Position numbers and translations under genes: made by a program. Below are positions 1-41,900 of a DNA stretch of 64,000 nucleotides, piece by piece (positions within the stretch are counted from its first letter, which is position 1; every line of letters starts with the position of its first letter). The notes beneath the pieces were generated by a model that saw nothing but the letters and a program-made list of their open reading frames with translations, was not told the origin of the DNA and made no database searches. Source of the DNA: Vitrella brassicaformis CCMP3155 (taxonomy: Eukaryota > Protista > Chromerida); assembly GCA_001179505.1 (NCBI GenBank), contig CDMY01000336.1:310001-374000 (forward strand), written 5' to 3'.

Positions 1-114
1 GTCGATCGCTTCGCTTCACTCACGTCGGACAGCCCACACACACACATGCGTGTCATTTGTTTGTGTTGTTGGTGTCTGTCTATCTGCCAACCAACCAACC
101 AACCAACCAACCAG

Positions 115-3100
115 GGACCTGACGAAACGGATCGCGGCACTGGAGCAGGAGCTGAGTGACAAGCAAGAGGAGATGCACATGCTCGTGGCCGCAGGTGACG
201 AGGAGGCCGACCGGACACTCGACACCATCAAGACGTACGTAAGGGAGGCGAGAGGGAGGGAGGGAGGGAGGGAGGACACACATGTGCCTTGTTGACTCAC
301 CCACGTGAACTGGTGGTTGGCGTCGGTCAGGTGCGAGGAGCAAATGGGGCGCCTGGCAGCGCAGAGGGCGAGGGCGCACAAGAAGACCGAGAAGCTGCGG
401 CTGCACAAGGCGAAGCTCGTCGAGGGTTCCAAGGCGCTGGTGGCCCAGCGAACGGCCCTAACACACCGACTGGTATGCACGTCATCATCATCAGTCACAT
501 ATAAGTACATACGGACTTGTGTACCCTCACTCACTCAGTGTTCCCTCCCTCCCTCCCTCCCTCCCTCCCCTGCTTGATTCCCTCCATGTGCGTGTCCAGG
601 AGCGCAAGCAGACCACACATCGGGTATGTGAGTACATTATGCACACACCATACACAGACAGGGAGAGAAGGCATGGGGGTCTGTGTGTTGCAGTCTGGCC
701 AAGTGTTTGCCGCACTGAGGGCCAATGTGACCATCGCCAGAGCGGAGAAGGACCTAAAGGTAAGGTATCCATCCCACAGCATCTCGTGACTTCTGTCCGG
801 CACAGAAAAGTCTCCCTGTCTCTGCCTTCATCCACCCACCCCACTCATGTCTCCGTGTCTCTGTCTTCAGACCATTGCTGCGTACATTTTATATCCGGAT
901 AGTCTCTCTTCACGCCATGAATGCCGGCTGCCGATCTCAGCTCAGCATCATGCGTTGACCAGCCTCAAAGCCTTCCAAGACTTTACGCATGGACAGGGGC
1001 CATACCCATGCAGATCTAGATACAGTGCATCGGGCCATCCCGTGAGCTCTGTCTGCTTTGAAGGCACAGCGGGCATTCATCATGTGTCCTTCCTTCTTGA
1101 CCCTCATTTCTCCGCCTATATATCTCCAGGACACTGCGATCGTGGCCTTGTGCAAGGAAGGTACACATCTTAGATACGATAGAGATGATCGCTCACACAT
1201 GCCATGCCGCCGGCGCCTTCCTTCATCTCTCTCTGTCTGTCTGTGTGTCTAGCGTATGGAGGCTGAGTTGGAGGGCACCAAGGAGAGGGGCCAGTACGCC
1301 GTCGATAGCACACGACGCATCCTCGCCGCACGAGCCATGTACACACACAGAGCACACCGCGGTTCCCTCCCTCCGTCCGTCCCTCACCCACTCTCTCTCT
1401 CTGTTTGGTTTGGTTTGCATATATGGATGCAGCCGTGACAAGTTGGTTGGCCAGAGGAGACTCGAGCTCAGCTGCGCTCTGCACTCCTGGCACCGCCAGT
1501 CACGTGCACGTGCCACTCCCCCCCACCCGCCGCCCCAATCGCTGGTGGAGACGTGTGAGCTGGGCTGCCAGACCGGTGGGGCATTGGGTGGGGTGGGCGT
1601 GGGCGTGTTGGTGAAACTACCTGAGACCCGCGATGTCAGTACAGCCACCGAGACCGAGGCGAGAGAGACAGAGGACAGAGCCGCTCAGACAGATAGTCGA
1701 CGGGACGACAGAGACCAAAACAGGTGGGATTGTCGTTCATTCATTTGTTGTGGCGCTTTGGTTGGTTGATGTGGTGTGGTGTGGTGTTGCTCGGCTCGGC
1801 TCGGCTCGCAGGTGTGTGGGTGCGGTGGGTCTGAGTGGGCTGATCAGTCGTCGCAACGAGCTGCACGGCCGATCCCCTTCATCGGCTCTGGTACGTACGT
1901 ACGTACGTACGTGTGTGTCTGTCCCTTTCTCCCTCCCTCCCTCCCTCCCTCCCTCAAATATATCCCATTCATAGTAATACTATGTATTATGTACGTACCA
2001 CTTGTTTTCCTTCAGGTCGAGTTGGCCTACTCTCACTCCCCGCCGTATGCATTGCATGTATGTAAGGCCCCATCCATCCATCCATCCATCCATCCACATC
2101 ATCATCAGTCACACAAGTACGTGTGTACCCTCACTCACTCTTCCCTCCCTCCCTCCCTCCCTCCCCTGCTTGATTCCCTCCATGTGTGTGTCCAGGACGC
2201 CTCGGTCAGCTCCCGCTTCCTCACTGCCGCCGTCTTCAGTGCATGGAGGCACCACACCGCCGCCCACAGGAGCAAACAGCTGGTAGGTCAGGTCAGTAGT
2301 AGTATGTTTGTGTGAAGGCGTGCTTCTCCTCCCCTCTACGTTTACTGATTCTGTTCGGTCGGCCCTTTTCTGTCTTGCTTTGTTTGTTTGCAGTCGTGTC
2401 GCAGCAGCCCCGAGCGGTTCTACTGCGGGCTGCTCGGGGAAACCAAGCGGTGGCTGACGGACAACGCCCGCTACGCCGAGAAGGAGCTGTGGTCGCTTCG
2501 CGACCAGCTTCAGGCGACGCGTCTCGACCTGGAGGTGGCCAGAGCGGTGAGTGAGTGAGAGCCATGGATATCGATTGTCTTGCTTGATGTCGTGTGTGTG
2601 CAGGATGCGTCTCCCCTTATCAACATGGCAATCGCAGCGACTTCCATGGCCCGGGCGATGAGCGACGACCTGAGGCGCCTTCTTTGGGAGAGGGAGATGG
2701 AGCTGGAGGTGTTCAAGGAGAAGTATAATGGCCATGTGAGTAGGGGTGGGCTGGCTGCACATGTGCCTTGTCGTCACTTTTCTCCTTCTAGCGTTGCCTA
2801 CATTTTATATCCGGAATGCAAGTGTCTCCCACTTCGCCGCAAACTGAAGCCGCTCTCATTTCGCCGGTGACAAAGAATCATTGTCTACATTTTACATCGA
2901 TGCCCTCGTCCGTAGAGGACCTCACCCGCCTGCATGCGTGGGCTTTCATTGGCTGCTTCCTTCAGGTGTCGCAAGAGGCTGACAGCCAACATCGTTGCCT
3001 ACATTTTATATCTGGGCGGAATGTGTCTCCTCTTCCGATGTTGAAGGCCGAGGTGAGAGGATACATACACGCTGTCCCTTGATTGCCTTTTGGATTTCCT

Positions 3101-4152
3101 TTCATATTAGATAACGGTCCCTTTTGTGTCGATTGGGGCGATCATTGGAAAGCGACACACGAGTCCACGTGTCAGCCAAAGATAGCGAATTCGGGCTCCA
3201 GGCTCGAGGTACACAGGAGGAAGGACAACAAGGAAGAGTGAGTGACGGACTGATTGACTCCGGGCTGCTCTTGATGATGCTCTCCCTCTCTCTGTGTGGA
3301 TGTGTGTATATATCAATTCAGGAGAGGATGCTGCAGGGCATTTGCCAAGGTGGCACACTGTACAACAGCATCCCGACGTTCCCGACCACCAAGCAATCAC
3401 CTACCTGCGGGCCGGCCAGCGTGCTACGCCTTCATCGCGCTCCCCACTCCCACCTCTACCCCCACCTCTACCCCCACCCCCACCTGCAGACACATGCCTG
3501 ATCAGTCCAGATATGGAGTCTCTTTTCTTTCTCTCTCTGTCTGTGTGGTGTCTATTGAACAATCAGGCGCAGGTTCAAAAGTAGAGGGCAGCAGTTTTGC
3601 TGCAACAGACCAAGGAGTACAAGGTCAATGGGTCGGCCACCTCAGGAGGAGCAGGTGGGCAAGGGTAAAGAAGGAGAGAGACATACACATTGTCCATATC
3701 AACTGTTGCACTGCTTCAGACAAGAAAAAGAGTTGCCAGGAGTAGAGCAGAGGAGATCATAATCGAAAACAAGGTGATGAGATGATTGCCACACGTTTCG
3801 CACATACGTGTGCATGTTCCAGCTCAGGGACAAGACGGGTTCCGTCACGAGAGGGACGCACGGACAACGGTGGAGAAGGAGATGGAGGGGCTTCAAGAAC
3901 GCCTGGGCCCGATCAAGGTGAGTGTGTCGTCAAGGAAAGACAAGAATGGGCAAGAGAGGCACATAATGGCTGGCGGTGCAGATGTGGAACGGTACGTATG
4001 AAGTATGTATGTTGTCACTCGCAAGCATCACGCACGCCCTGTCTTTGTCTGTCTGTCTGTCTGTCTTTCTGTCTCGGTGCCGGTTAGCAGAGAGGCATGC
4101 ATGGCTGGAGGCCGACTTGGGCCGTTCTACCCCGAGAAGGGCCCCGCAGTGA
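115..4152 (+). CDS. Multi-exon coiled-coil protein of unknown function (5' end outside the window, 3' end uncertain)
   Basis: A chain of GT-AG-bounded exons encodes heptad-like helical peptides: DLTKRIAALEQELSDKQEEMHML (115-235), CEEQMGRLAAQRARAHKKTEKLRLHKAKL (331-472), EKELWSLRDQLQATRLDLEVARA (~2393-2547), DDLRRLLWEREMELEVFKEKY (~2604-2734), HERDARTTVEKEMEGLQERLGPIK (~3828-3918). No catalytic motif seen. The last exon and stop are ambiguous. Confidence 0.55.
473..599 (+). repeat. Intron copy A of a pair of homologous introns
   Basis: Starts gtatgca and ends tgcttgattccctccatgtgcgtgtccag. Its last ~100 nt are near-identical to intron 2045-2195. Confidence 0.85.
2045..2195 (+). repeat. Intron copy B of a pair of homologous introns
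   Basis: Starts gtatgca and shares catcatcatcagtcaca...gtgtaccctcactcactc...(ccct)n...cccctgcttgattccctccatgtg.gtgtccag with 473-599. Confidence 0.85.
2792..3030 (+). repeat. Intronic dispersed motif CRTTG(N)CTACATTTTAYATC (three copies here, a related fourth at 873-899)
   Basis: cgttgcctacattttatatc is exact at 2792-2811 and 2993-3012; ttgtctacattttacatc lies at 2881-2898; cattgctgcgtacattttatatccgga lies at 873-899. Confidence 0.75.
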
Positions 4153-26137: not shown

Positions 26138-29100
26138 ATGTGCCTGCTCGTTTTCACTTGTTTCGTTGCGCTGTTGGCGCCCGGCGCTGCTGCAGAGTGG
26201 AGCGAGGTGACACGCCGGCATCCTGCGTGGCTGACGACACCCATTCCAGCCATTCCCTACCCGAAGACGTGGCTGTCCATCGGCGTGTGGCTTTTCAATG
26301 GCAACAGGGAGAAGGACTTCACTGAAACCGTCGTCGAAAAGGTCAGACTCTCTCAGGACGTCTGATGCCCGGACGGCTCCGCCGGCATTTTGTCTTGTCT
26401 ATGTACGTGCAGGCCCTGTCTTTCTATGTGGACAGGCTGAACAACGAATATGGCGGGATACGAGTGGGCGAAATGACGCTGAGAGTGTGCCTTGTGCCGT
26501 TCTACTCTTCTGACCCCTCCCGGGTGCCTCATGCCTTGCTTGAAGCCATGGAGACGCGTCGCATCGACTTGGTCTACGTCTCTCACCCCTTTGAGCAGCT
26601 ACACACAGCATTTGGGGCTCTTGACGGGCTCAAGATGATATCCCTGTGGCCATTCAGCGGAGGCTTCGCCGGAAAATTCAAGTATCCGATCACGACGTCA
26701 ATAGGGCTGCAGCCCTACGCAGACGTCTTTGCCAGTGTCGCAGAGAGAGAAGGGACTCAGAAGGTCCATGAGCAAACATGAAAAGAAAGGGAGGACCACG
26801 TGGAACACAAAATGTGTGTTTTCCTCTTCTTGTAGGTTGGATTAATTTGGAAAGATGGCGACGAATACGGCACTGAGGCGGCTCTGCACCGCTTGATGCG
26901 AGAAGCCTTCAAGGAGCGCAACATAACCATCGTCCTGGAAAAAAGGATGCCCCCGAGACCATCACCCCCCAGAGGGCTCGAGAGATCGTGCGGCTAGCCA
27001 AGAAGAGGGGCGTCGAGGTCTTGTGCAGCCTCCAAGACGGTGCTGCCGAGATCGTGTCGGCAATGGAGAGAGAAGAGCTGGACCTCCAGGCCCTTTTTTG
27101 GTTTGCGCTGCCGGCTCAGCCGCACATCTGGCAGCCCCTTGGCAGACGCGGCGACTATGTGATCTTTCCGGCACAGTGGCACCCGACGGTTGTATATGAC
27201 GATCCTGTGGTCAACTCGACGGCGCTGCTCGAGGACTGGCGCGCGTGTTTTGACACCGATACTGACATTTCGTACGTCCAAGCGATGGCCTTGCTCCCAC
27301 TACACTTCCTCAAGCTGACGATGGAGATGCTCAATGTGTGGACAGACGACCCCATTGTCAACGCGGTGGGTCGGCTCGGTGCAGAGAAGTGACACGATGC
27401 GGGTATACGCAGGTTTGATTTGGGTTGGTTTGCCTGTTGCTAGGATCGTTTATTGTGGGAGCTGTCTCGCAACGAGGTCCCCACTTTCATGGGCCCCGTA
27501 CGGTTGGATCGCTACAACCGCAATAGCGGCACGTCAGCTGTTCTCGTGCAGCAACAGAACCAAAAGCAGGTGGGTGGGCTACTTTGGCGTCCATCTGGAT
27601 GGACTTGGTGATATTCTGTCTCCAATCTTCCTTGACACAAACAGCATGCCGTGCTGCCGGTTGAATCAGCAAGCAGTGAGCTAGTGTGGCCGCTGCCCAC
27701 GTGGGAGGTGAAGAGGGGCTGTCCGCCGGGCAAGTACATCCACGAGGCAAGAGAATGCCTCCCGTGTCCACCCAACTCCTTCAGCGTCTCAGTCAATGCC
27801 GAGAGATGCTCACTCTGTCCACTCGGTGAGACACAAAGAGGAATGATGCAGCTAAGCAAGGAGACACGGTGACTTTTGGCGTTTTTGACTCGTTCAGGCC
27901 ACGGCCAGCCCCGGGAAGGACAAACGAAATGTGTCATGTGTGCATTTGGATATGGGAATATCGGTGGAACGCTTGATGGATGCCGCCCCTGCTTGCGAGG
28001 CTCTTATTCTGACTTCTACGGCACTTGCATCTGTCTCAAGTGCGACCCGGGGACCTACGCAGACACCGAGGCTTCCATTGCATGCACACGTTGCCCTGAG
28101 GGAGAAACCACTCTCGCAGAAGGATCCGGTCGTCCGAGCGACTGCACATGCCAGTCGGGCTTTTATCAGCAGCCTGCCGCGAACATTTCGTCTATTGCTG
28201 ACCCCCGTCGCCTGGATGCAGGAATGCAGGCGGCGCTAGCCCTGGAGAACAGCACAGAGCACCTGGTGCGCGGCAGGTGTGCTCCTTGCCCCGATGGCTG
28301 CAGCTGCCCAGGCAAGCTGAGAGCCGACGGGAGATCGATCGATCACCTCATTCATGTCCAGTTCCCGGCACACTGGCCTGTGTGTCGCTGCTTCTGCAGG
28401 TGGCGAAAAACCACCGAGCATTCTTCCGGGCTACTGGCTCCCCCCGCCGAGCTCTATGGATCGAGTCCACCTGATTGATAAGCAGATGGAGCAAGAGATC
28501 ACCGACCTGCCTTCATTACCGGGCTTCGAGCCCAGATCGGTGAATGCCAGCACGCCACCAGCGAGCGAGGTGAATGTGTCGGATGGCGTCGTCGCGGACC
28601 CTGTCGCCCTGTCGTACGAGGCCGACACCGCGGCCCAGCTGCTAACGCTATCGACATTCAGCAACGTATCAGCTGTGGCGGCGTCGCTGCCGTTTCGCGT
28701 CAATCCCACTCTTCTGCCCGACACTGCGGCAAACGATACAGAAGAAGACGACACCAACGAGAGAGGCATGGACATTCTGCTGTCCTTGAGGCGGCACCTT
28801 CCTTTCAAGTGCGTGCCACCTTCATCGTGCCCTGGCGGAGATGCCGGCGCCTGTGCCGCCAATCGGGAGGGGCTGGTATGCGGCAGGTGCTCGAAAGGCA
28901 GATTCGACAGCAGAAGAGAGGATGGTTCTGTATGTCACCCTTGTACTTTTCGCCTGTCCTTCCCTCTGGTGGGTCACAGCACGGGGCGGGCCGACCGCCC
29001 AGCCCATACCGTCTCGCGACCATCTCTGTACTTGCCTCTCAGGCCGTTTTCCTACTGCTCTGCGTCATGTTGCCCTGCGCTGCTCTGCTGGTGAGGCCAA

Positions 29101-31167
29101 CACGAATTGCCACAAACACATGAATTTTTCCGCTTCCCTGCCACAGATTTGGTTTGCTAATGGCCAAGTGTGGCGAAACGGCAACTCAGTATCATTCCTG
29201 TTCACCTCGTTCCAGCAGCTCGGCATGGTCACCTCTGTGTGCGCCGCCCTGCCCTTCTCGGTTGCGCGAGTCTTTAGTCTCTTCCGTTTGATGCTCTTTG
29301 ATGGCTCGCCCGTCGGCCTGTGTCTCGCCTGCCATGGGCTGGATACTTTTCAGTCGCAACACAATTTCTTACTATCTATGCCGCTGTTCCTTGTGGCGGC
29401 CCTGGTGATCATCTATGCGGCGTCGCAGGTCTGAGTGAGACGCTGGGAGTGAGGAAGACGCAGATGATGCTCGGCTGTGTCCATTGCAGGTGCTTCATAG
29501 GCGCGAGAGTGGGGAGTGGCGGCTGGTGCTCCTGGGACGGTGCCTTGTGCTGCGCCCACTGACCATACACACGTGAGTGCCACCAGCGGACAGACCTAAA
29601 TCACATTTGTCACATTGGTGGACTGACAGGTGCTGGCGTCTCTCATCCTGATGTTCCACATGCTCATGATTACCCTTGCCCGGATCGCCCTCATCCCATT
29701 CGACTGTTATAAGCACCCCAACGGCTACTCGTCTGTCCGCGAGTTCCCCCACGTCCTTTGTGGCCTCCATGGGGAGGCGGCCATCTGGCGGCAGCACCTG
29801 TGGGTGTCGTACATCGGCCTGGGGGCTTATTGCGGGTCGGTTGTCATTATGACGACACGGTTTGCTCTCGCCGCAAACAGAAGGGGCGACGAAACGGGTA
29901 CCGACATTTGCACATCCGCGTCACTGTCTGGCTCACGTGCCTGTGTTGCTGCGATTTTCAGGATTCAAGGAGGTCTACGGTCACTTCATGGACAAGTTTG
30001 CAGGTGGCAAGTATTGGTGGTCCGTCGTATGGATGGCGCGCAACCTTTCGCTGGCCCTCACAGTGACGCTGCCTCACGGCAGCATCCAGAAGGTGTTTGT
30101 GGCTTCGCTGACGACGGTCTATCTGGTGCTGCTCATATTTGTCTTGCCGTGGAAGAGGCCCACGGATGTGTACGTGGACGGGTCGACCAACGCCATATAC
30201 CTACACATTCTGCTGATCAGTGGCCTCAGCTCACAGGGAGATCACAAAAACGAGCAACAGGGAAAGATGCTCGGTGAGCCGGGACGGAGAGGATCCCACA
30301 GAGACATACATCCATGCACGCGATGGATGCATAACGCAACGCGTGTGTTGGGATTTCTGTGTATCCCAGTTGTCCTTTTGACGGTGTCGGTGGTTCTCAT
30401 GCAAGGCATTATCCTCGGGCGGCTCGCATTGGTAAGGGTGAAAAGGCGGACAACCACATGCTACATGCGCATACTAACATCGTGTCTCTGACCTTCTTTT
30501 GGAACAGAGTGGCTTGGCCAAGTGCCGTGGTTTGCGACAACGCAGCAAACAGATTACTCAGTCCGACACATCCCTCGACGTCACAAACGATACCATAGGC
30601 CCCTACGACCCACAAGAGACACAAGAGAATCCTCTTGAAGAAATGACGACTCATGATAAGGGCAAGTTGAAGGCAGGCCGCCGGTCCCAGTCAGTGAGGA
30701 GTTTCGCCACTACCACCTGCACACGGCACGGCAGCAGCAGCAGCAGCACCTCGCTACTCCTGGCTCCCGCAGACAGCATGCCATGCAGCAGCAAGGAGTG
30801 CGACACGGATCTGGCTCAGCCACCCGCTGCGGCGGAGGCCACAGTTGGCCAGCAGCAGCCACTGTCACTAGCGCAGAGGTCCGAGAGCCCATCTTCCTGC
30901 TCATCGTCTTCATCGTCGGGCAACGAGGATGAGATCGATGTTGTCATCCCGCCTCCCATCGTCACACCACCATCAGACGAATGTCCACTGGCACGGGCAG
31001 ACTCAGCCGATGTGTGTGAGGCTGAGGACAACGAGCCGCCGGCTCAGGCCAACAGGCCTTGGCTCACTGTGGTTGGGGAGGTCCGCTTGATGGCCTCTCG
31101 CATACCCAGCATGACGCCATCGACGGCCGCTGATTCCACTGGAGCGGCCAGAACACAAGACGCTTGA
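26138..31167 (+). CDS. Secreted-type receptor-like membrane protein: periplasmic-binding-protein (Venus flytrap)-like ectodomain, Cys-rich (GCC2/GCC3, ephrin-receptor-like) repeats and about 8-9 TM helices
   Basis: Signal peptide MCLLVFTCFVALLAPGAAA. PBP1/LivJ-like motifs VDRLNNEYGGIRVG, KVGLIWKDGDEYG, DYVIFPAQWHP and TFMGPVRLDRYNRN. Cys-rich repeats CPPGKY...CLPCPPNSF, CRPCLRGSYS, CLKCDPGTY, CTRCPEGETT...SDCTCQSGFY, CPGG...PGYW and CAANREGLVCGRCSKG. Hydrophobic helices from ~29040 to ~30430 with FxxKYWWxVV and LPWK motifs. Ser-rich tail to 31167. Confidence 0.75.
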
Positions 31168-31789
31168 ATGAATAGAAAAACCCCCGGCTGCAGTGTGTGT
31201 GCGTGTGCAATTTTGCATCTCTGTTGCCCGACATTCGGACGTTGTGTGTGTCTCGGTTGCGAGAATCGACTTTTTGTCCGTGGCTGTGCATTCTGTATGT
31301 GCAAGGCAACAGCCTCTGATAGAGAGGCTGCAGTTCCTTCCTTCTGTTTCTCGGGAGGGAAGGAGGCATGCGGGCGGGGAGTTCTTATTACTCCTGTGTG
31401 TGTGTGTGGTGCTGATGCGACTCGACCAAACGCGATGCAGACTTCTGGCTGCATGAGACAGCGTCTTGACATTTTCTCAAATGTGCAGCAAGCAGCGTCA
31501 AGCTGCTGTGCTTCATCCAGTGCTATTTCGCTGCCTGGTGGGCGAAAAGCTATCTTCTGTGTCCGTACGCACAAGGGGCATGTATTGTTCGCCAGAGTGT
31601 ACTAAGCAAGTCTGTCTGTCTGTCTGTCTGCCATGATTGATCGTGGACATGCAATGCATCGCAACCAACATATCCTATTCCATCACACCGACCAAATGCC
31701 CGGCGAACAGCGATCCACACAACAAAGATGGGACAAATAAAAACACGTATACATGCGAATGTCGAGACCGGTGTCTCTCCAAGTCCTGC

Positions 31790-34700
31790 CTATCGCTCGG
31801 TCACCCATGCCCTTCTCGATGTCGCTTCATCCTTTTCGTCCTTGTCCGCCGCATCAGCCGACAGCGGCAGCTCCTCGAGCCCCAGGGACTTCCTTAGTTG
31901 CCTAATGTCCTCACTGGCAGCGGACGATGGTGCCGATGAAGGGAATGAAGGGGGAGGAGGCCTCACTGGCCTCAGAGCAAGCTGCGGACGGGGAGGGGGC
32001 GGGGGCAAAGAGGGCGGCCCCGGTGGTAGGGCCCTTGGCTCTTGGACTGGTAGGGGTGGGCCGGGCGCTGCCACTGGTGGCTGAGGAGAAGGCTGTTGAG
32101 GCTCTGTCTCGTCGACATGCCGTTGGTCTTGTTCCTGTAGCGGCTGAGCAGCTTCAGCCTCTGGCACTGGCATTGGTGGTGTCTCGTCCACATGTTGCTG
32201 CTCTTGTTCCTGGCCTTGTTCTTGCTCTTGGTCCTCCTCTTCTTGTTGGTCGGCTGTTGGCTTATCGTCGGGTGTGTGTGTCTCCTGCGGTTGGCCCTGG
32301 AGTACGGGCATGGGGGGCGGGTTAGGGAGAGGGGGAAGCAAGGCCAGGGGCGGAAAGGGGGGCAAAGGTGGGAGAGACGGCAGCGGGGGAAAGGGGAGCA
32401 GTCCACCCATCGGCAAGGGAGGGGCCTCGCCTGGCGGTGGAGGAGCTGCTGACGGGGCTACCGGTGGCGGGGGAGGTGCTGGCACCTCTCGCATGCCGCC
32501 CTTGTCTGTCCGTCTTGGTTCAAAGCGGCTTTCCTCTCTAGGGCGGAATAATGCCGTAATCAGCTTGCCGAATGGCGACTCCCCCTTCTTGCTCTCGCCC
32601 AGTGGGGACTCTCTTCTACCCAGCTCGATGCGCCGCGCCTACCAGCACGGAGACAAGATTCACTGTGCATGCAGTCACATGAGCGCATCGTTTTCAACAA
32701 CTCACCACGAAGTCTCCACGCTTGTGCTGGCGCCTCAGTTCGAAGCGCTTGATCTCTGCTACAGTGACGAGTATGGCGCGAAGGACATCGAGGACCAAAG
32801 AGACAAGACAAAACCCGACCACACTCGCGTACAGCCTGATGATGCATGCAGTGGAAAGACAAAAATGAGACGCGAAGAATGCAACGTGCAAGAGATATGT
32901 TGACCATGATGACTCTTCCTCAGTGCTGAATTTGGTGCCGTATGTGAGCACAATCACGGTGGCCGCCGTCATGAAAGTCGTGGATGCGATATACGGAAGC
33001 AACACAACGATAGAGTACACCTGAGGCCAAACAGCGCAGGTGAACAACCGCGCCCCCGTCCCCTTTCACGCACTCACCGTGGAGGGCACAGGTTTCCTGG
33101 TGGCGGCCATGCGTGTCAGTTCTTCCATCTGCAGCCGCTGGTGCTCCTTTTGCACCCTGTCCAGGTACACGCTCCTCACCCGCCGCACAAAGACGTCATC
33201 CTCTTCGCCGGGTGGGGGCGGGGGAGGGGGCTGCATGGGCGTCGCTAAGGGTGGCACAGGAATCTACATCACACATATGGAGAGCAACAGACATGCCATC
33301 CATCCATCGATCGATCCAGCATCTGTCTCACCGTGCCAGCTATGAATGGCGCTGTGCCGGTGCTTATGAAGGCGCTCCCGACTGCCGGCGACATGCCTCC
33401 TCCCCCGTAGTAAATCGGTGGGCTTGCACTCGACATCATCTTCTGCATTGCCCCCGACCCACCTGGACTGTATCCGCCGTAGACAGGCGGCAGAGGGGGC
33501 GGCAGGGGGCGGAAAATGGGAGGGAGAGAGGGAGGGCCGACAGGTGGTGGGGATGGCTGTGCTGGCTGGGAGGGTATCTCATCCACATTGACCATCCCTG
33601 GTAGCGGGGGTGGCGGCATGCTGTGTGTCTCCTGTGCCTCCCTGTCATGCACGTCTTTGGACGGCACTGGGGTCGCCAGCCGATCTTCCTCAGCCACATG
33701 GGGCGTCGTCAATTCCGCGCTGGGAGGCGCCTCGGCAGACGATGGTGGCTGCTCGTCAGTGGCTGACTTGTTGGTATCGTCTTGGCCAGGTGAGGGCATG
33801 GGCAGTGGGGGCAGTGGGGGCAGTGGTGGCCCTCGTGGCCCACCCTCAGGCGCACTTGGCAATGGAGGCAGTGACGGCGGGCGCCCCATCGGCCGCATCG
33901 GTGGCGGTGGTGGCGGTGGAGGGGGCATGCTCCTTGTTGGTGATGTGGCTCGTGGCGGGGGTGCGATAGGGGGAAGTGGCCCTAGGCTGGACATGAGGGA
34001 AGGGGATGCGATGGATGGCGGTGGGTGCTTGGGGGGAGGCGGTCTGAAGTCAGGGTGGGATGGGGGAGGCGATGGTAATGTCAGCGACTTCATCCCTACG
34101 CACACAATACACACGATGGAAGAACGGGCAAACTGTCGGCCCTCCTTCCTGCAAACGAACCTGCGACAGGGATTTGCACTCCCTGCATGACCAGGGGCAC
34201 AGGTCCGCTGCCGCCCAGCGATGGCGGCATCGGCATCATGGGCAGAGGGGGCGGTGGGGGGACGGGAGGGCTGCCAGGCTTGCCGGCCTCGCCAACGCCC
34301 GAGAACATCGATATGGACGGCTTGAAGTAGTGAATGACGTCACCGCCGGACGGGGCTTGGCCCCGATACTTGGGGGCCTTGTGGACGACGGGGTGCGGCC
34401 GGCGGGCAAACATCAACCCAAAACCCACGAAAATGGGAAATATGAGCAGGCCAGACAGAAGGCCTGAGACACAGACATATGGAGTGGGGAAGTGGACAAC
34501 AGATCAACGTATGTATGTCCCCGAGCAGGCGCACCGGGAGTGAAGAAGTCCGAAGCGACGAGCAGCTTTCGGCTGTACAGAACGGCGTTGAAGGCCATGA
34601 TGCCAACCACACACACACCCAGACACACCAACCGCTGAGGGCGGGAATAAATCTGACAACCGAAGAAACAGAGATATGGGCCGGTGAGTTGATCATCGGT

Positions 34701-37700
34701 TGCAAACACACTGCCAGCATAGTGCTGCTTTGCTTGCTGGTTGGTTGATGTGATGCCATCCATGCCCACCTCACCTCTCTGTACATGAAAGGTGATATGA
34801 GCACGTGATCTCGCTTGATGACGCTCCACAGTGTGTAGATGAAGAGCCTTGACGGCTCGTTGACATGCTGGTAGGCAATGGGGTCTCCGGGCCCCTTCGG
34901 ACCGGTCACGCCATCACCTGTCGGGCCAACAACCTCCGTCACGCCCTTCTTGCCCTCGCGCCGGGCACGCCTGATAGAAACGCAGGAATGTGTGCAAGTG
35001 TCGACGCGTGGCATGACAATGATTTTGTGGCGGCGAGTGTGCGCACTTTTTCTCTTTGTGTTTCTTGCGCCTGTCGACTTGCCAGCCCCAGAAGGTGCAC
35101 AACGCATTGGCCAGCAGGACCAAGGCCAGCGACAATCCCACCGCAAGATTGGTCGTCTCCAGACCTGCAGCCACACAGGACCTAAGGGATTGAGACGAAT
35201 TTCCCCTTCTGCAGACATCGCCTGCGCACCAGCGTCGAGCAGCAGCGATGCAGCGTCGTAGAAAGTCTCAATGTCGAGCAGCCTGCCGTCGAGGAACAGA
35301 CCCATGTCGCTCAGCTGGCTAGTAAGGCAACCCAGTCCGTCATTGGCAATGCCCCTGCGAGACCATGCCCCACCAGCCGTCCCGGGGGCAAACCGATCCC
35401 ACACCACACACTGACCTGCACGCATTCGAGACACACACACAAGGTGAATGCAACAGAAAGCATGCCCTCAAAGCATTATTTTCACTCACCGGACGAGAAG
35501 CTCTTGACATTTGCGAACACCCGCGTGAATTGGCTTTCGTTCTTGTCGAGTTCGTTGGTGTTGGCTTTGAGCGGCAGCATGGTGATGACGTATGTGAAGT
35601 TGCCGGGGGGGTTGGAGTCGGACCAGTCGTAGATGTTCTTGGTGTAGGCCACGAAGATGAATGAGAAAGCGTTGAGGGGGTTGTCGGGTGTGGGCTCGTC
35701 GGGCGTGTCGGGCGGGACGGTGTACTGCTGAGGGAAGATGAACTGGGGATGCACCGCTGAGAGATCGGTCGTCTTGCCTGCAATGCATTGCATTGAGTGT
35801 GGCGGAGACGGAAACATCCACACCAGCATGTATGCATGTCCCTGAGCGCGTGTATGGGTGTCTGTCTTGCTCGCTGACCGAGTGTGATGTCGAATCCCGG
35901 CGTCTGGTACTGCAGGGGCAGCTCATTCGATATGAGGTTGGCAATCAGCTGCTTGGACAGGACGTCTCGCGACACGGCGATGCGGGTCATCAGCTGTGAC
36001 TTGTTCCTCTGCTCGCTATACAGGGTGTCCGCCAGCACCTTCAAGGTCGCCTCGAACTGAGCACGACGGACGGCCTGCTCATCGGCCGGCAGATCCTTGA
36101 TCTCAACTTCGAACTTGGCATACCGCTGCAGCTCCTCCTGTGCCCAGGGAGATGTCAACGGATGCGGACACAACACTGGAGGGGGCAGCTCAGAGCCATG
36201 TCAACTCTCTGCTCACCCGTCTCTGTCTGTCCAGCTCGGTCTGCAGCTCCATGACTTCATCGAGCAGCGGACCCTCCAGCGACTCGAGGCCATCATAGTC
36301 TTCCTCACCAGAGTTGGTCAGATACCCAATTGTGCGCATCACCGAGGCCCGCTGTGATTCCTCTGTGTCGTCTGTCTGCGTCGCATTCGCTGCTTGCAGT
36401 CTCCGTTGCGTGGTGGACCCGAAGAGCCGTCGTCTCGTCGGAACGGCACCCTTGCCGCTCTTGATAGCCATCATCGACCGTGTAGGGACCTTGTACGACG
36501 CCAGCAACTGTGTCGCAAGGGCGCTCTGGTTGTGGTGGGCGCCAACAAGGTCCAGGGCATCCAACACGGCCTGGTTAAGGCCAGCTTCCCTCCATTTGGG
36601 CAGGCTCCATATCTCCTCTGTGGCTCTGCTCCTCGCGTAAGAGACGACATCGGGGTTGCGGGTGTTGACTGTTCGCGTGGCGAACTCGACTTGTTCCGCT
36701 GGATTGGACAAGGGGTTTGCATTGAGGCCTCCCGTCTGCTCGCCGGGCAGCAGGACGCCGAGGATGTAGAACGAGATGGCCGAGAGCGACATGCCGTCCT
36801 CACTAGATGGGTCGAAGGCGCCGATGCTGACGCCAGAGTTGACGAGGTTCTCGAGCACGTCCATGGGTTTGTCCGACCTGAGCCCCTTGTCAGTGACTAC
36901 AGCCAGGAAGAGGAGCTTCTGCTGCAGCACTTGGGGTGTATCGGGTGAGTCCCTCGTCCTCTCTGTCATGATGTCCAGCATCTTCTCAAGCAGCGTCTGC
37001 GTCTCGGGGTCAAGCTCCTCACCTGGTCCAGGCGGCTCGGGATCTGAGAGATGGGAGAGAGACACATGCAGGACCGAAGCATGAGACACAATGCTCTCGT
37101 GTGCGCTTGAGGCGAGGCTTCCTCACCGACGATGCTGAGTGCCGTTTGGAGGGTCTGCACGACAGTCTCGGGGTCCTGCGCCTCTGCCTCATCGAGCAGG
37201 TCGTCCACGGCCCCAGTGACGTTCTCGGGCCGTGTGCTCGATATGGAAAGATACTCAGTGGTCCGGGCACCAAACGGTGTGAACACCTCCACGAACGTAA
37301 CGAGCGTCCCGTTGCTCCCGGTGCCAACAGGCAGTGAGTTGACCTTGACTTGAGAGACGGGGAGAGGAGCCGTCGTGATCTTCACGCGCACAATGTCAAC
37401 TATGCCGTCCTGAAAAGAGACACAGAGGAACCGCGCCCTTTCCTTTTCATGGTGCCGCATCCATGTATCCATACCGTTTCGAGTTGCGATAAGTACCCAA
37501 AATCATACGAGAGGGGCGTGTCATCAGCCGTCCAGTCAGGGGCGCTTAGCGTCCTCGGCGTTGTGGACGTGGCAGCAAGCGGCGTCACAATCAGCTGTCC
37601 TCCCTTGGGCGGCAGTCCCGCAGTCACGATCGTCACATCCGTGTAGCCCTCAGCCAATCCTACTCGCGTCACGAGGCGGAACTTGTACGTTGTTGATCCC

Positions 37701-40700
37701 GACAGGACGTTGGAGTAGATGACAAGGTTGGGACTGCTGGGATCGGTCTGAAATAGCGATGCATTGTTGATGTTGAGGATGTCTTCCGCCACCTCCACAA
37801 ACTTGTACCGGTCAACCAGATACGGGTTGTCGGTGCCCTCGCGCTCCCGGAACTCGTCTGCGTCCCAGTCGGGATTGAGGTCGTACACAAAGATCTGCAA
37901 ACAAGAGACACATGAATCCACACCGGTCAAGAGTCTCGTTTGACTGTTTGCCTGGTCACCTTCCAGGAGAAAAGGGGCGGGTTGTTTGGGTCTCTCTCCC
38001 CTTCGATCGTGCCCACGATGCGTATGGGGTCGCTGATGGCATATATCTCCTTAACGTTGGTCACCTGCAGACGCACATCTGACAGAAGCAAAGCAAACAC
38101 GAGTGAGTCCACTAAGACATTGATGCCAGTAAGGTAAGGTGTCTGTCTCACTGGGAATGGTTTCTCTCGTGATGTTGATGAAGGCATCTCCCGTCGCCTT
38201 GCGGCCATCTGCGGCAGTGATGATGGCGGTGAACTTGTACTCGCCTTCTTTGAACATGTCCGTCCGCACCATGATGACGCCCCTCGTGTAGCTGCAGTAG
38301 TTGAGGTTCAGCTCCTCCAGCAAAGGCACGGCGAACTCCACACCTCCATCCAGCACCTTCCTGTCCTTGTCTGTCTCACAGACCGACATATTGGTGATCC
38401 GAGGCAGATTCCCTCCGTAGCAAGGGATGCGATCGGGGTCATAGCACTGAGGACGTGGGACAAAACATGAGACACGCCGCGGCAGTACTGCTTCGGTTAT
38501 CTCGTCTCACCTCCCATTCGAACGTGCCGGCGAATGTCTTGCCCGCTCCTGTTGGGAAGTCGGGGTCCTGTGACTGGCGGGCATCGAGAATCAACAGACG
38601 GCCGCGGGTCAGCCCACGAGACTCACGACGATACACCACAAAAATGGGAGACCTGAGCGAGAGGTGAGTCCACAGGATGAGAGCACAGCCGTCGTCTTCT
38701 CGTGTCGGTCACTCACTCACCTCTGGACTTTGATTCTGACAGACTTGGTGGTGACCTTTTCTGGCGCGCTAATGACGAAGACCGACACGGTGAAGTTGTA
38801 TGACGTCTCGGGCATAAGCGTGAATGGCGGAATGACCAACGTTCTGGACTGCCTCTTGATGCTCGGGAAGTTGGCAAAGTTGAGATTGCCGGTCTTCTCG
38901 CCCCACTGGAAGCCGAGCTTGCGATCGACGCCAGGGCACATCGACGGAAGAGCTTCAGAGATGAGACTCACTTGCTGCGTTCTGTTTGCTGTGATGTCTG
39001 TGAGACCCAGGATGGACACCATAGGAGCGGGGAAGTCGAGCTTGTTGACATTGATGAGTGTGATGGAAGTCACATCCCAGAAAGACAGCACCGTCAAGTT
39101 GAGGCGGAAATTGGTCGCCGGCTCCAGCTCGAAGGCACCCATCTCCACACGGGGACTGTTGCTCGCTGTGTACGAGGCAAGCCGACTCTGAGACAAGAAG
39201 AACTCTAATGCAATAATTCTGCTTCTTTCCCTCGTCTTCTGTGCCTGCTGACCTTGAACAGATCGATCAACGTCTGGTTGAACACCCGATCGGGCCTGTT
39301 GTTCAAATCACTGTAGCCCAGAAGGCTCCAAAAGTACTTAGGCCGGCCGCCAACATTGAACGTGTCGGCAGCATCCAGCTCCATCGGCGAACACTCATCC
39401 AGCTCTGTCGAGCCCGACAAGACGATAGATGGCGGAAGCAGGGGGTCGGGATAGCCGACAAGGATGCCTCCAATGGCGGGCATCGACCACTCATCGTTGC
39501 GTGGCTGGGTCCAGATGGTGTAGGGGCGGACAAACAAGTTATCGTTCACCTGCAAGGCGGCCAACAGAGGAGGGTGTGTGCATGGATATCTTTTTGTTGT
39601 TTTCATCTTGTTGGCCGACCCTGATAATGAAGTCAATGGGAAGTGAAATGATGACTTTGGCGTCCGTGGCCCAGTCACAGATGGCCCCTACCAGCAGGGC
39701 AGCTGACTCATCATCGAATATACGACCACACTCCACCTGGATAAAGAAGCGCATACAATACATGCATTCACGGCAGGCCGGTCGATGTGCGTGTCTCTGT
39801 CAAGCACCGGTTCGTTCATCTGTGTCGAGTAGTCGATGTAGTCGGGGATCAGATCATCATCAATGTCGACAGGTTTGGCGCCACGAAGAGTCGACCTGCC
39901 AAAAGAGAAAGACAAGACGTGCATATTCCATGCTGACATCCTGGAGACCATTTCCTCCCTCACTGACGTGGAGAAGTCCACAATGATGCTCGACGCCTCC
40001 ATCATGAAGACGGCCCGGATCAGCTCTGGAGGCGGCAGCGTCAGAGGCACACGTGGGTCCCGATTGTACACCTGTGCCGTGGATGTCTCGATCGGCATGG
40101 TGCCGTTGTCTCCCCACAGCTCCTTGGCCTTGGTGCGGATGTCAACCTGCACGACGGTGGGCTCCGTGGCCCTGAATGGCTCCTTGCGTGTGGCAATGAT
40201 GGTCTTGTTGAACATGTGGTCGCTGCACACGCCACCCACGTAGAAGCCCCAGTCGTCCTCGGTGCTCTCGGGGCCGGAGTTGTAGATGCTGGAGGAAGGG
40301 TCGTAGAGGACGTCGTTATAGGTCTGGGCCACGTCTGCCGATGTCAGGAGCTTCATTGGCACAAGCGGGTCGAATTGCCAGTCGATGGCCACCGTGTCTG
40401 CACACACAGACAAGAACAGACAGCACTGACAGGCCTGTGTGTCCACACACTTGCAGCCAAGCTTAGCGGCGCAGCCGCACTGACCGTCGTCTCGCCTCAA
40501 GTAGTTTCCGAGATAAAGATACTGCAGCAGCCCACTATCCCGAGCACCCATGGCAGTCAGGTCGCCGTATTTCTCATTGAAAGTCAACATTGTCACCCTG
40601 AAGTCGACTGTGCGTTCCTCCAGCCCCACGTGATTGCGCATGTCATAAAACAGGAGACGGTCAGTGAGAGGCGCATTCAGGCCTACACGCCATGCACACA

Positions 40701-41900
40701 TCAAGAGACACAAGCCCGCATATACTAGAATCAATCACCGCTGTGCTCATTCATTCGTGGCCCGCTCACCCTACCCTTGTCGGAGAGAGAGTCTTCATCG
40801 GTGACGACAAAGGCATACACATCGTGAAGAGAGTTGATGGCCGACACCGGCGAGAAAAGGAACCTGCTGTAGGCCGCACCCCCGCCGCCCTGCACCACCA
40901 ATGGATAGGTGGTCGTAGTCATTTTGGGGTTGCGCGCATCGCTGGTGTTGATGCGGATCTGGGCGAACTCATAGCTGAAGTCTCTCTCCCCAGTCCCCGT
41001 GTTCCAATCGCTGTTGATCTGGACACCGACAATCCTCGATGAGTCGATGTCGTAATGGATGCCGTGCAGCTCCCCGGAGTAGCCCAGGTCCGTGTTGGTC
41101 AGCCGTAGCTGGTGCTGATACAGGGGCTTCCCCGTCAGTGTCGATATGCAGTGCAGCCAAAACTGCCAGTAGGGGCCGTAGTCTGTCGGGCTGTTCGATC
41201 TTGTCTTCTGCGTGGCCACAACCGTGTAGAACATGTACCGCCACGGGTCATATCCCCCAATGCTGCCCCCCTGGTCCCGATCATACTCCCGAAATCCCGA
41301 CCATATCCCCGCTCCTCCGCCACATCTGCCCGGCGTGTCAAACTCTTCACAAGGGTTGTTACACAACTCGTCACCGATCTGCGAGATGCCCGGGACGATC
41401 CCTTCCGTGTGTGTAAAGCACGCGCAGCCAGTGCCGCGGACCAGCACCATAATGTCGCCTGTGCTCCATGCCGGGTCCTTGATGTCATTGTGTGGCTGGT
41501 TGGCCTTCTCAATGCATCGGCCAGTGCAGTTGACGGGGTCGGGTGCGTCGAGGGTCTCCTCCATTGCCTCGGCTGCACCGCCGCTGCTCGAGAAGCACCC
41601 TACCTAGCCACAGCACACAACACAACACAGGTCAGCAGACACCTCTCTCTGCACTGATTGGTGAGTATTGGTACCCACCCAGAGGAATCTTGATTTGAGT
41701 TTGAATGCCTGCGGCTCGCCCTGCTCGTCGACCTTGGAGAGATAGAGGATATGCGGGTTGACGAAACTCCCATCAGCCAGCTCCCGCGGCCTGTGCTGCA
41801 CCGACTCGATGGAAAGCCCATCCACTCCCCGCAGCAGACTGGCGCATACTAGCAGCACCGCAACAGTGTATGCATTCCTCGAACACATCCCCATCTGCAT
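31790..41900 (-). CDS. Polycystin-1 (PKD1)-like adhesion receptor: signal peptide, WSC, REJ, GPS/GAIN, 5 TM and polyproline cytoplasmic regions
   Basis: Signal peptide (AVLLVCASLLRGVDG). WSC-like GCF...CTGRC...GTGCAC...CNNPC...CGG (~41300-41590). REJ-like PSIVLSGSTELDECSPMELDAADT and PPKGGQLIVTP...APDW...PLSYDFGY. GPS-like CVVWD...W...G...CLTSQLSDMGLF (~35290-35415). TM1 NLAVGLSLALVLLANALCTFWGW; then RDHVLISPF-YSRPQRLVCLGVCVVGIMAFNAVLY-GLLSGLLIFPIFVGFGLMF; Pro-rich loop; VVLLPYIASTTFMTAATVIVLTYG-WLYASVVGFCLVSLVLDVLRAIL; Pro/Gln-rich tail. Confidence 0.8.

What the first reader, a model, noticed from the sequence alone, without database searches (positions are those of the whole stretch)
31790..41900. 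Polycystin-1-like receptor with only the five N-terminal TM helices: no PLAT, no channel half, polyproline loops
The spliced product has WSC, REJ and GPS domains, then segments that track human PC1 TM1-TM5 as I recall them. RDHVLISPF..YSRPQRLVCLGVCVVGIMAFNAVLY corresponds to KHIWLSIW..FTRIQRATCC..ANAVWY; GLLSGLLIFPIFV to GLVSSVVVYPVY; LTYGTKF..SSWLYASVVGF..LDVLRAIL to GASF..VAWLLSSS..WEPLKVLL. The loop between TM1 and TM2 is far too short for a PLAT domain, and after TM5 the protein ends in a Pro/Gln-rich tail with no TOP/S1-S6 channel region. The TM3-TM4 loop and the tail are packed with polyproline runs (32000-32480, 33200-34300), which are typical profilin/SH3/EVH1 ligands. Inference: a channel-less adhesion or mechanosensing receptor coupled to actin, of interest for the origin of polycystins in alveolates.
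Basis: partly seen in the sequence, partly recalled or inferred. Interest (0 to 1): 0.72.

Follow-up and report, generated by a model that had tools for sequence, protein, structure and literature searches.

The report
Channel-less polycystin-1-like algal surface receptor
This is a real, expressed 26-exon gene of an alveolate alga for a 2,760-residue surface receptor that has the outer modules and the first five membrane helices of human polycystin-1 but lacks its PLAT domain and ion-channel half. It belongs to an unstudied family shared with dinoflagellates and Perkinsus.

Summary
A spliced transcript contig and an open 26-exon GT-AG model give one minus-strand gene, from ATG 41900 to stop 31790, encoding about 2,760 aa. 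The order of parts is: signal peptide, WSC-like module, unassigned region, REJ, GAIN/GPS, five membrane helices, a proline-rich TM3-TM4 loop of about 400 aa, and a proline-rich tail of about 300 aa.

Kinship with polycystin-1 (PC1) was tested, not recalled.
- A profile of about 19 relatives hits PC1 TM2-TM3 in the PDB at E 3e-4.
- An AlphaFold model of a relative's five-helix region matches PC1 residues 3067-3610 at Z 18.9. The next of 48,161 chains scores 7.0.

The TM1-TM2 loop is 84 aa, too short for PLAT. The mRNA ends about 31476 against a convergent gene, so no channel half can follow. No relative has PLAT or PKD_channel.

In this gene the GPS reads QLS, not HLS, so self-cleavage is doubtful. 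Coupling to actin through the polyproline is untested.

Relatives occur in dinoflagellates and Perkinsus, all unnamed. Earlier notes of this scan report paralogues with the same architecture on other DNA of this genome, which they call Vitrella brassicaformis (not verified here). Channel-less PKD1-family proteins are already known in sea urchin. I class it as a new variant of a known kind, of moderate interest.

The parts
31476..31789 (-). 3' UTR; the mRNA 3' end is at about 31476
   Evidence: Transcript contig X4 record 10 starts at 31476. The contig of the convergent + strand neighbour ends at 31492.
31790..32759 (-). Cytosolic Pro/Gln/Glu-rich tail after TM5, including the stop codon at 31790-31792 and one intron at 32639-32705
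   Evidence: Last exon 32638-31790 is in the transcript. It is 25% Pro with PPPPP runs. Pfam finds no domain.
32760..32834 (-). TM5 (LYASVVGFCLVSLVLDVLRAILVTV), followed by the conserved E-[LI]-[RK]-x-F-E-x-R motif
   Evidence: In the relative's model this helix falls within the alignment to PC1, which ends between PC1 3610 and 3623 depending on the chain.
32937..33020 (-). TM4 (VYSIVVLLPYIASTTFMTAATVIVLTYG)
   Evidence: The exon was fixed by the contig length sum and by depth per bin.
33078..34404 (-). Cytosolic proline-rich TM3-TM4 loop of about 400 aa, spread over three exons, ending in the conserved helix EEDDVFVRRVRSVYLDRV before TM4
   Evidence: Exon 34095-33332 is 31% Pro with a P9 run. 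The loop is disordered in the relative's model. Composition is conserved in 25 relatives at 22-31% Pro.
34405..34461 (-). TM3 (LLSGLLIFPIFVGFGLMFA)
   Evidence: The family profile aligns this helix to PC1 GLVSSVVVYPVYLAILFLF.
34575..34813 (-). Pre-TM2 helix and TM2 (RDHVLISPFMYRE / IYSRPQR LVCLGVCVVGIMAFNAVLY), with intron 34653-34774 inside
   Evidence: The family profile aligns FTRPQR plus TM2 to PC1 SRFTRIQRATCCVLL...ANAVWYG at E 3.3e-4.
35082..35150 (-). TM1 (NLAVGLSLALVLLANALCTFWGW), followed by the basic stretch QVDRRKKHKEKKRARREGKK
   Evidence: Exon 35164-35047 was chosen from the three exon sets that fit the contig length. It alone aligns with the family's TM1.
35285..35413 (-). GPS motif with QLS at the position of the cleavage triad HL(S/T)
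   Evidence: Pfam GPS E 0.0074, below cut-off. In the family alignment His is conserved in at least 90% of members and is Gln here.
35230..37043 (-). GAIN-like region (four exons: helical part, then beta part with the GPS). It lacks the 8-Cys knot present in relatives
   Evidence: The model of the equivalent part of P0014 hits adhesion-GPCR GAIN domains, best BAI3 4dlo at E 3.8e-7. The window matches 50 of 69 conserved columns and has no Cys in exon 36217-37041.
37127..39549 (-). REJ module (seven exons)
   Evidence: Pfam REJ in two exon pieces. The region is collinear with REJ-bearing relatives at 40-66% identity per exon.
39620..41291 (-). Unassigned ectodomain region of about 480 aa between WSC and REJ. 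The AYDPWRY-type motif at its start hints at a propeller blade
   Evidence: No Pfam hit. Collinear with relatives. The family profile gives small repeated matches to designed Kelch propellers. Exon borders here are predicted only.
41292..41603 (-). WSC-like eight-cysteine module (VGCF...CGGGAGIWSGF)
   Evidence: Alignment to the family module. 14 of 19 relatives hit Pfam WSC, and the profile hits yeast Wsc1 7pz2 at E 0.004. The window itself has no direct Pfam hit.
41679..41900 (-). Exon 1, with the start codon at 41900 and the signal peptide MQMGMCSRNAYTVAVLLVCASLLRGVDG (41900-41817)
   Evidence: The exon 1/2 junction RFLW|VGCF reproduces the family's ...HIGCF motif. This exon is not confirmed by the transcript contig.

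Best explanation
The gene encodes a multi-pass cell-surface receptor of the polycystin-1 (PKD1) superfamily that consists only of the receptor half of PC1.

Outside the cell lie a signal peptide, a WSC-type carbohydrate-binding module, an unassigned region of about 480 aa, a REJ module and a GAIN domain with its GPS motif directly before the first helix. In the membrane sits a five-helix bundle equivalent to PC1 TM1-TM5. The cytosolic TM1-TM2 loop of 84 aa has no room for PLAT. The large cytosolic TM3-TM4 loop and the C-terminal tail are disordered and proline-rich. There is no TRP-like six-helix channel part.

Shown here: the gene structure and its expression, the domain order, the homology of the membrane part to PC1, and the absence of PLAT and channel.

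Inferred: the ectodomain binds extracellular glycan or wall material. Ligand or force is passed through the GAIN and stalk to the five-helix bundle. The output runs through proteins that dock on the proline-rich cytosolic segments (SH3, WW or profilin-type readers), not through ion flux of the protein's own. Because the GPS triad is QLS here, this species' copy probably stays uncleaved, whereas most relatives keep HLS and may self-cleave.
For: Expression and structure:
- An 8,320-nt spliced contig covers the C-terminal half and ends at about 31476.
- The 26-exon model is open over 2,760 aa and all introns are GT-AG of 56-122 nt.
- The neighbouring gene at 26365-31167 is on the + strand and convergent.

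Domains:
- REJ by Pfam in the window and at E 1e-21 to 1e-37 in relatives.
- GAIN fold for the equivalent region of P0014: the ten best PDB matches are all adhesion-GPCR GAIN domains, best E 3.8e-7.
- WSC at family level.

Membrane part:
- The family profile's best PDB hits are PC1 chains, E 3.3e-4, over TM2-TM3.
- All ten Foldseek hits of the five-helix model are PC1.
- VIA-align gives Z 17-20, rmsd 2.5-3.1 A over 177-209 residues, to PC1 3067-3620.
- In the exhaustive control PC1 is the only chain of 48,161 with Z >= 8 (18.9 against 7.0).
- The window's exons keep 41 of 48, 18 of 23 and 50 of 69 of the family's columns conserved at 90% or more.

Absences and composition:
- No PLAT or PKD_channel in five relatives scanned in full at E <= 0.1 or 1. 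The precomputed Pfam lists of all 30 hits show only REJ, with WSC in one protein and PF10294, a family unrelated to polycystins, in two.
- Proline content of loop and tail is conserved across 25 relatives although their sequences do not align.
Against: - The structure models are of relatives (Effrenium voratum P0013 and P0014), not of the window's own spliced protein, which could not be submitted.
- The TM4-TM5 profile alone finds nothing in the PDB, so the kinship of those two helices rests on the fold match.
- The alignments are shallow (19-25 sequences) and mean pLDDT is 64-70.
- Pfam GPS and WSC do not reach their cut-offs in the window.
- The 5' part of the model is 277 nt longer than the transcript contig allows, so an extra intron or a truncated contig remains open.
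- Nothing tested here bears on ligand, localisation, cleavage or binding partners.
Confidence: 0.8

Rival explanations
1. Split polycystin. The protein is the receptor subunit of a two-gene complex and binds non-covalently to a separately encoded TRPP/PKD2-like channel. Its output would then be ion flux after all, as in PC1/PC2.
For: In animals the PC1 receptor half works next to a TRP-like pore (PDB titles). The five-helix fold is conserved to Z 18.9. Earlier notes of this scan mention other polycystin-like membrane proteins in this genome.
Against: In the PC1/PC2 complex, as I recall the published structure (not checked here), PC1 joins the pore through its own TM6-TM11, which are absent here. 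No interaction was tested.
Confidence: 0.2
2. Passive adhesion or wall-anchoring protein. The ectodomain ties the cell to wall or matrix material, and the proline-rich cytosolic parts are only flexible spacers, with no signalling role.
For: The ectodomain has WSC and REJ modules. In this species the GPS triad is degenerate (QLS), so tethered-agonist signalling of the adhesion-GPCR type is unlikely here. The loop and tail sequences are not conserved, only their composition.
Against: The five-helix bundle, the pre-TM2 and pre-TM4 helices and the post-TM5 basic motif are highly conserved across distant lineages. That is more than an anchor would need. Most relatives keep HLS.
Confidence: 0.15
3. 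Annotation artefact: two genes or a pseudogene read together, or a truncated copy of an 11-TM gene.
For: The 5' 277 nt of the model are not accounted for by the transcript contig. The upstream exon borders are predicted ab initio.
Against: One spliced contig spans from the 3' UTR into the ectodomain exons. There are no internal stops in 2,760 codons. The gene is collinear from end to end with about 25 full-length transcripts of 2,600-2,990 aa from other organisms, which end in the same way.
Confidence: 0.03

Closest known systems
Human polycystin-1 (PKD1; PDB 6a70, 8z6b and related entries)
   Same: WSC, REJ and GAIN/GPS directly before TM1. Five-helix N-terminal membrane domain with the same fold and topology (Z 18.9-20.1, PC1 3067-3620). 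The FTRxQR motif before TM2 and the G..S...YP motif in TM3. A long cytosolic TM3-TM4 loop: the fold match spans PC1 3067-3620 with only about 200 residues aligned.
   Different: No PLAT in the TM1-TM2 loop, no TM6-TM11 channel-like half and no TOP domain. No LRR, C-lectin or PKD repeats were found. Loop and tail are proline-rich. The GPS triad is QLS in this gene.
Sea urchin SpREJ1, 2, 7, 8, 9 and 10 (PKD1-family members with 0, 1, 2 or 6 membrane segments; PMC1934368)
   Same: REJ/GPS receptors of the PKD1 family that lack the six-helix channel part. They set a precedent for channel-less members.
   Different: Those are animal proteins with 0-2 or 6 predicted helices, and five of the ten SpREJ proteins have PLAT. 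None is described as having exactly the five-helix domain with polyproline loops. No sequence comparison was made here.
Adhesion GPCRs (latrophilin, BAI, CELSR, ADGRG)
   Same: A GAIN domain with GPS directly before the first helix. These give the best structural matches for the pre-membrane region.
   Different: The membrane part has five helices, not a secretin-like 7TM. GPCR structures score Z <= 5.6 against the model.
Fungal WSC cell-wall stress sensors (Wsc1/Slg1; PDB 7pz2)
   Same: An N-terminal eight-cysteine WSC module on a surface sensor. The family profile hits 7pz2 at E 0.004.
   Different: The fungal sensors have one helix and a Ser/Thr-rich stalk, with no REJ, GAIN or five-helix bundle.
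Uncharacterised myzozoan proteins (Perkinsus chesapeaki 'WSC domain-containing protein' P0015; Effrenium voratum P0008 and P0013; Polykrikos kofoidii P0002; Symbiodinium and Prorocentrum entries)
   Same: Same length, same order of modules and same conserved motifs. Collinear over the whole gene at 30-41% identity.
   Different: The relatives carry an 8-Cys knot inside the GAIN region, and most have HLS at the GPS. The window's protein has neither.

Membership tests
PKD1 (polycystin-1) family | REJ domain in the ectodomain | tested here: met
   Pfam PF02010 at E 7.2e-12 and 1.7e-5 in two exon pieces, and at 1e-21 to 1e-37 in relatives.
PKD1 (polycystin-1) family | GAIN domain with GPS motif immediately before TM1 | tested here: met
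   The GPS motif at 35413-35285 lies 23 residues before TM1. The GAIN fold is shown for the equivalent region of relative P0014. The window matches 50 of 69 conserved columns. The Pfam GPS hit in the window is only E 0.0074.
PKD1 (polycystin-1) family | Autoproteolysis triad HL(T/S) at the GPS | tested here: not met
   The window has QLS. His is conserved in at least 90% of 19 relatives. Cleavage itself cannot be tested with these tools.
PKD1 (polycystin-1) family | N-terminal five-helix membrane domain (TM1-TM5) | tested here: met
   Profile against the PDB: PC1 at E 3.3e-4 over TM2-TM3. Model of relative P0013: Z 18.9 to PC1 3067-3610, the only chain of 48,161 with Z >= 8. The window has five hydrophobic segments aligned to the family's.
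PKD1 (polycystin-1) family | PLAT/LH2 domain in the cytosolic TM1-TM2 loop | tested here: not met
   The loop is 84 aa in the window. No PF01477 hit in window pieces at E <= 10, none in five relatives at E <= 0.1 or 1, and none in the precomputed lists.
PKD1 (polycystin-1) family | C-terminal six-helix TRP-like channel domain (PKD_channel, TM6-TM11) | tested here: not met
   Stop at 31790. The mRNA ends at about 31476 against a convergent gene. There is no hydrophobic segment after TM5, and no PF08016 in the window or in relatives.
Adhesion GPCRs | Secretin-like seven-helix domain after the GAIN | tested here: not met
   Five helices only. The best GPCR match is Z 5.6, against 18.9 for PC1.
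WSC-domain proteins | Eight-cysteine WSC module recognised by PF01822 | tested here: inconclusive
   The window has no Pfam hit at E <= 10, but its eight Cys align to the family module. 14 of 19 relatives hit WSC at E <= 0.01, mostly below the cut-off of 27.8 bits. The family profile hits yeast Wsc1 at E 0.004.
Formin-type FH1 polyproline actin-assembly segment | Polyproline tracts adjacent to an FH2 domain that bind profilin-actin | tested here: not met
   Polyproline tracts are present, with runs of 5-9. No FH2 or any other Pfam domain is found in the loop or tail. Profilin binding cannot be tested with these tools.

The most novel reading that the evidence does not exclude
The family may preserve the stand-alone form of the polycystin-1 receptor module: WSC-REJ-GAIN plus a five-helix bundle. 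On this reading animal PC1 arose by fusing such a receptor with a PLAT domain and a TRPP-type channel subunit, and the five-helix domain is an autonomous signalling unit whose output here runs through polyproline-docking proteins and not through a pore. The alternatives are secondary loss of PLAT and channel in Myzozoa, or ancient gene transfer.
Probability: 0.25. Interest if true: 0.75.

Novelty: new variant of a known kind. Interest (0 to 1): 0.55.

Why it matters
What the first five helices of polycystin-1 do is not settled, and I know of no study that isolates them from the channel half of the protein, the main polycystic kidney disease protein. This family is conserved across chromerid, perkinsid and dinoflagellate lineages, and it carries that five-helix domain with REJ and GAIN but without PLAT or channel. 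That shows the domain can exist and be kept by selection on its own. It offers a natural minimal system for asking what the domain senses and how it signals. It also bears on how the 11-helix animal protein was assembled. For alveolate biology it marks a large, expressed class of surface receptors with no assigned function.

Tried and rejected
- Single-exon phmmer searches of the TM2, pre-TM2 and GPS exons against the PDB gave nothing meaningful. The exons are too short, and only the family profile reached PC1.
- The TM4-TM5 profile found nothing in the PDB.
- The exhaustive protein search with the GAIN-A exon (window:36217-37041:-) gave only three weak hits and no self hit. It still supplied the first two full-length relatives. 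The exon later proved to lack the family's Cys knot, which explains the weak result.
- Two word searches did not return the window's own protein, so its annotation status and the organism could not be verified.
- The 'joints' in the reads table come from microsatellite-like stretches, not from splicing.
- An in-frame candidate intron at 41441-41379 was rejected because it would remove the conserved CxC of the WSC module.
- Alternative exon sets for the three unlisted gaps were rejected by depth per bin and by homology.
- The ESM Atlas shape and feature searches gave only unnamed or weak leads.
- Five literature searches found no paper on this family.
It was assembled only inside a script, to check the frame, its length, motif coordinates and hydropathy.
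Full report
**Gene and transcript.** The region 31790-41900 holds one minus-strand gene of a GC-rich (about 58%), intron-bearing eukaryote. Laying public runs on window:30500-36499 showed that run X4 holds an 8,320-nt spliced contig. Its listed pieces are 31476-32637, 33332-34094, 34160-34462, 34775-34969, 35488-35776, 35878-36136 and 36216-36499 onwards. Three stretches of that contig were not listed (433, 119 and 303 nt). I solved them by enumerating GT-AG exon sets of exactly those lengths that keep the frame open. I then chose among the sets by the contig's depth per 200-nt bin (16.9 times the covered fraction) and by alignment to relatives.

The result is thirteen exons from 37043 to the stop at 31790-31792, all with GT-AG introns. 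The upstream half was predicted with a splice and codon model trained on these introns. It agrees exon by exon with blastx matches to relatives.

The whole 26-exon model is open for 2,760 codons, with introns of 56-122 nt. It is 277 nt longer than the contig allows. Either the contig is cut short at its 5' end or one to three further small introns exist upstream. This is unresolved.

The many other 'joints' in the reads table fall on microsatellite-like stretches ((CAG)n, (GTCT)n, (CCAT)n, (CA)n) and are not splicing.

**No continuation downstream.** The mRNA contig ends at about 31476. The next gene, with ORFs from 26365 to a stop at 31167, is on the + strand. Its own unspliced contig runs to 31492, so the two genes converge and their 3' ends overlap by 17 nt.

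**Domains in the window, exon by exon.**
- REJ: Pfam finds it in two pieces (E 7.2e-12 and 1.7e-5).
- GPS: Pfam gives only a sub-threshold hit in the exon QCVVWDRFAPGTAGGAWSRRGIANDGLGCLTSQLSDMGLF (E 0.0074).
- WSC, PLAT, PKD_channel: no hit anywhere, even at E <= 10.
- Hydropathy on the model finds a signal peptide and five membrane segments. TM1 lies 23 residues after the GPS. TM2 and TM3 are separated by 14 residues. TM4 and TM5 are separated by 11 residues.
- The basic flanks (RRKKHKEKKRARR after TM1, RRPHPVVHK after TM3, RRQHKR after TM5) put the 84-aa TM1-TM2 loop, the TM3-TM4 loop of about 400 aa and the tail of about 300 aa in the cytosol.

**Relatives.** The exhaustive search with the longest exon (window:36217-37041:-) gave only three weak hits. 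Two of them are full-length proteins of 2,866 and 2,813 aa. Word searches seeded with these returned 30 proteins, most of them 2,600-2,990 aa. They come from Effrenium voratum, Symbiodinium microadriaticum, Prorocentrum cordatum, Polykrikos kofoidii, Perkinsus chesapeaki and unnamed transcriptomes. All are unnamed or 'hypothetical'. Their precomputed Pfam lists show only REJ, with WSC in Perkinsus and an unrelated PF10294 in two entries. The window's gene is collinear with them from about 41456 to 32706 at 30-41% identity. None of them is the window's own protein.

**Is the membrane part PC1-like?** Single exons found nothing in the PDB.
- A profile of 19 relatives from GPS to TM3 (A1) has three polycystin-1 sequences, covering a dozen entries, as its best PDB hits (E 3.3e-4). 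It aligns FTRPQR-TM2-loop-TM3 to PC1 SRFTRIQRATCCVLL...ANAVWYG...GLVSSVVVYPVYLAILFLF.
- The TM4-TM5 profile (A2) finds nothing.
- An AlphaFold model of TM1-TM5 of the Effrenium relative with the shortest loop (P0013:1116-1537, alignment A3) has helices at pLDDT 75-92 and pTM 0.55.
- Foldseek returns ten hits, all PC1, though at non-significant E values.
- VIA-align gives Z 17.1-20.1, rmsd 2.5-3.1 A and 177-209 aligned residues, from model 4..410 to PC1 3067..3620.
- In the exhaustive control against 48,161 chains, PC1 (Z 18.9) is the only chain with Z >= 8. The next are ABC transporters at about 7 and GPCRs at 5.6 or less.

By my recollection of the UniProt annotation, which I did not check here, residues 3067-3620 run from just before TM1 to just after TM5 and stop before TM6. 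The window's exons carry 41 of 48 (GPS-TM3) and 18 of 23 (TM4-TM5) of the columns that are at least 90% conserved in the family. The misses are mostly conservative.

**GAIN and WSC.** A model of P0014:1248-1813 (alignment A4, 25 sequences, pLDDT 70) matches adhesion-GPCR GAIN domains as its ten best PDB hits: BAI3 at 3.8e-7, BAI2 at 1.3e-6, then latrophilins, CELSR1, CD97, GPR56 and GPR126. The window's four exons align to it with 50 of 69 conserved columns. They lack an eight-cysteine knot present in all 25 relatives, and they read QLS where at least 90% of relatives have His in HLS.

The N-terminal module hits Pfam WSC in 14 of 19 relatives (best 1.8e-7), and the family profile hits the yeast Wsc1 structure 7pz2 at E 0.004. 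The window's exon 2 starts VGCF and has all eight cysteines in register. WSC is therefore supported by family homology and not by a direct hit.

**Proline-rich parts.** The loop exons are 21-31% Pro with runs up to nine. The tail is 25% Pro. Ectodomain exons are 5-9% Pro. In 25 relatives the loop is 22-31% Pro and the tail 18-32% Pro, although these parts do not align. The composition is thus under selection. What binds there is unknown.

**Comparison and novelty.** The protein shares WSC, REJ, GAIN/GPS and the five-helix domain with PC1. It fails three defining features of the 11-helix PKD1 proteins: PLAT, the channel half and, in this copy, the cleavage triad. Channel-less PKD1-family members are known in sea urchin, where SpREJ1, 8 and 9 have one helix, SpREJ2 two, SpREJ7 six and SpREJ10 none (PMC1934368). 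GAIN domains are known in ciliates and Dictyostelium (PMC3321182). I found no paper on this myzozoan family. [quoted passage not shown]

Earlier notes of this scan report paralogues in this genome with the same or a similar architecture on other DNA (s1-215944, s1-212016, s1-235841) and name the organism Vitrella brassicaformis. I could not verify the name. The short GT-AG introns, the GC content and the 2015 runs are compatible with it.

**Limits.** All searches used single exons by reference or database relatives. Inside scripts the join served only to check the frame, length, motif coordinates and hydropathy. The function is inferred.

Noticed in passing
window 39620-41291 (minus strand); relatives such as P0001:150-700: The unassigned region of about 480 aa after the WSC module starts with a conserved QGAYDPWRY.WYTVV motif. 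This motif gives small repeated matches to designed Kelch propellers (8pjz, whole-sequence E 4e-6, with each repeat weak). A beta-propeller may lie between WSC and REJ.
   Followed up: no
window 36217-37041 (minus strand), compared with alignment A4: All 25 relatives carry an eight-cysteine knot (CPTAFCD...CC...NP.T.C.DPPCWF.G..CP) and an insert of about 100 aa inside the GAIN region. The window's protein has no cysteine at all in this exon.
   Followed up: partly
window 31476-31492: The 3' ends of this gene's transcript contig (minus strand) and of the convergent + strand neighbour's contig overlap by 17 nt.
   Followed up: partly
window 30733-30749, 31611-31634, 33295-33316, 33905-33920, 34608-34620: Short microsatellite-like stretches ((CAG)n, (GTCT)6, (CCAT)3(CGAT)2, (GGT)n, (CA)n) attract hundreds of unrelated contigs and produce spurious 'joints' in read-laying. 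Two of them are 4-nt tandem units, in line with the 4-base duplication habit noted elsewhere in this genome.
   Followed up: partly
window 26365-31167 (+ strand): The neighbouring multi-exon gene has a Cys-rich stalk and hydrophobic segments. Here I checked only its strand and its 3' end.
   Followed up: no
P0026, P0028 (Symbiodinium entries): Two database models of this family are fused or mis-joined with a PF10294 methyltransferase and named 'Protein-lysine methyltransferase METTL21B'. This is probably a gene-model artefact.
   Followed up: no
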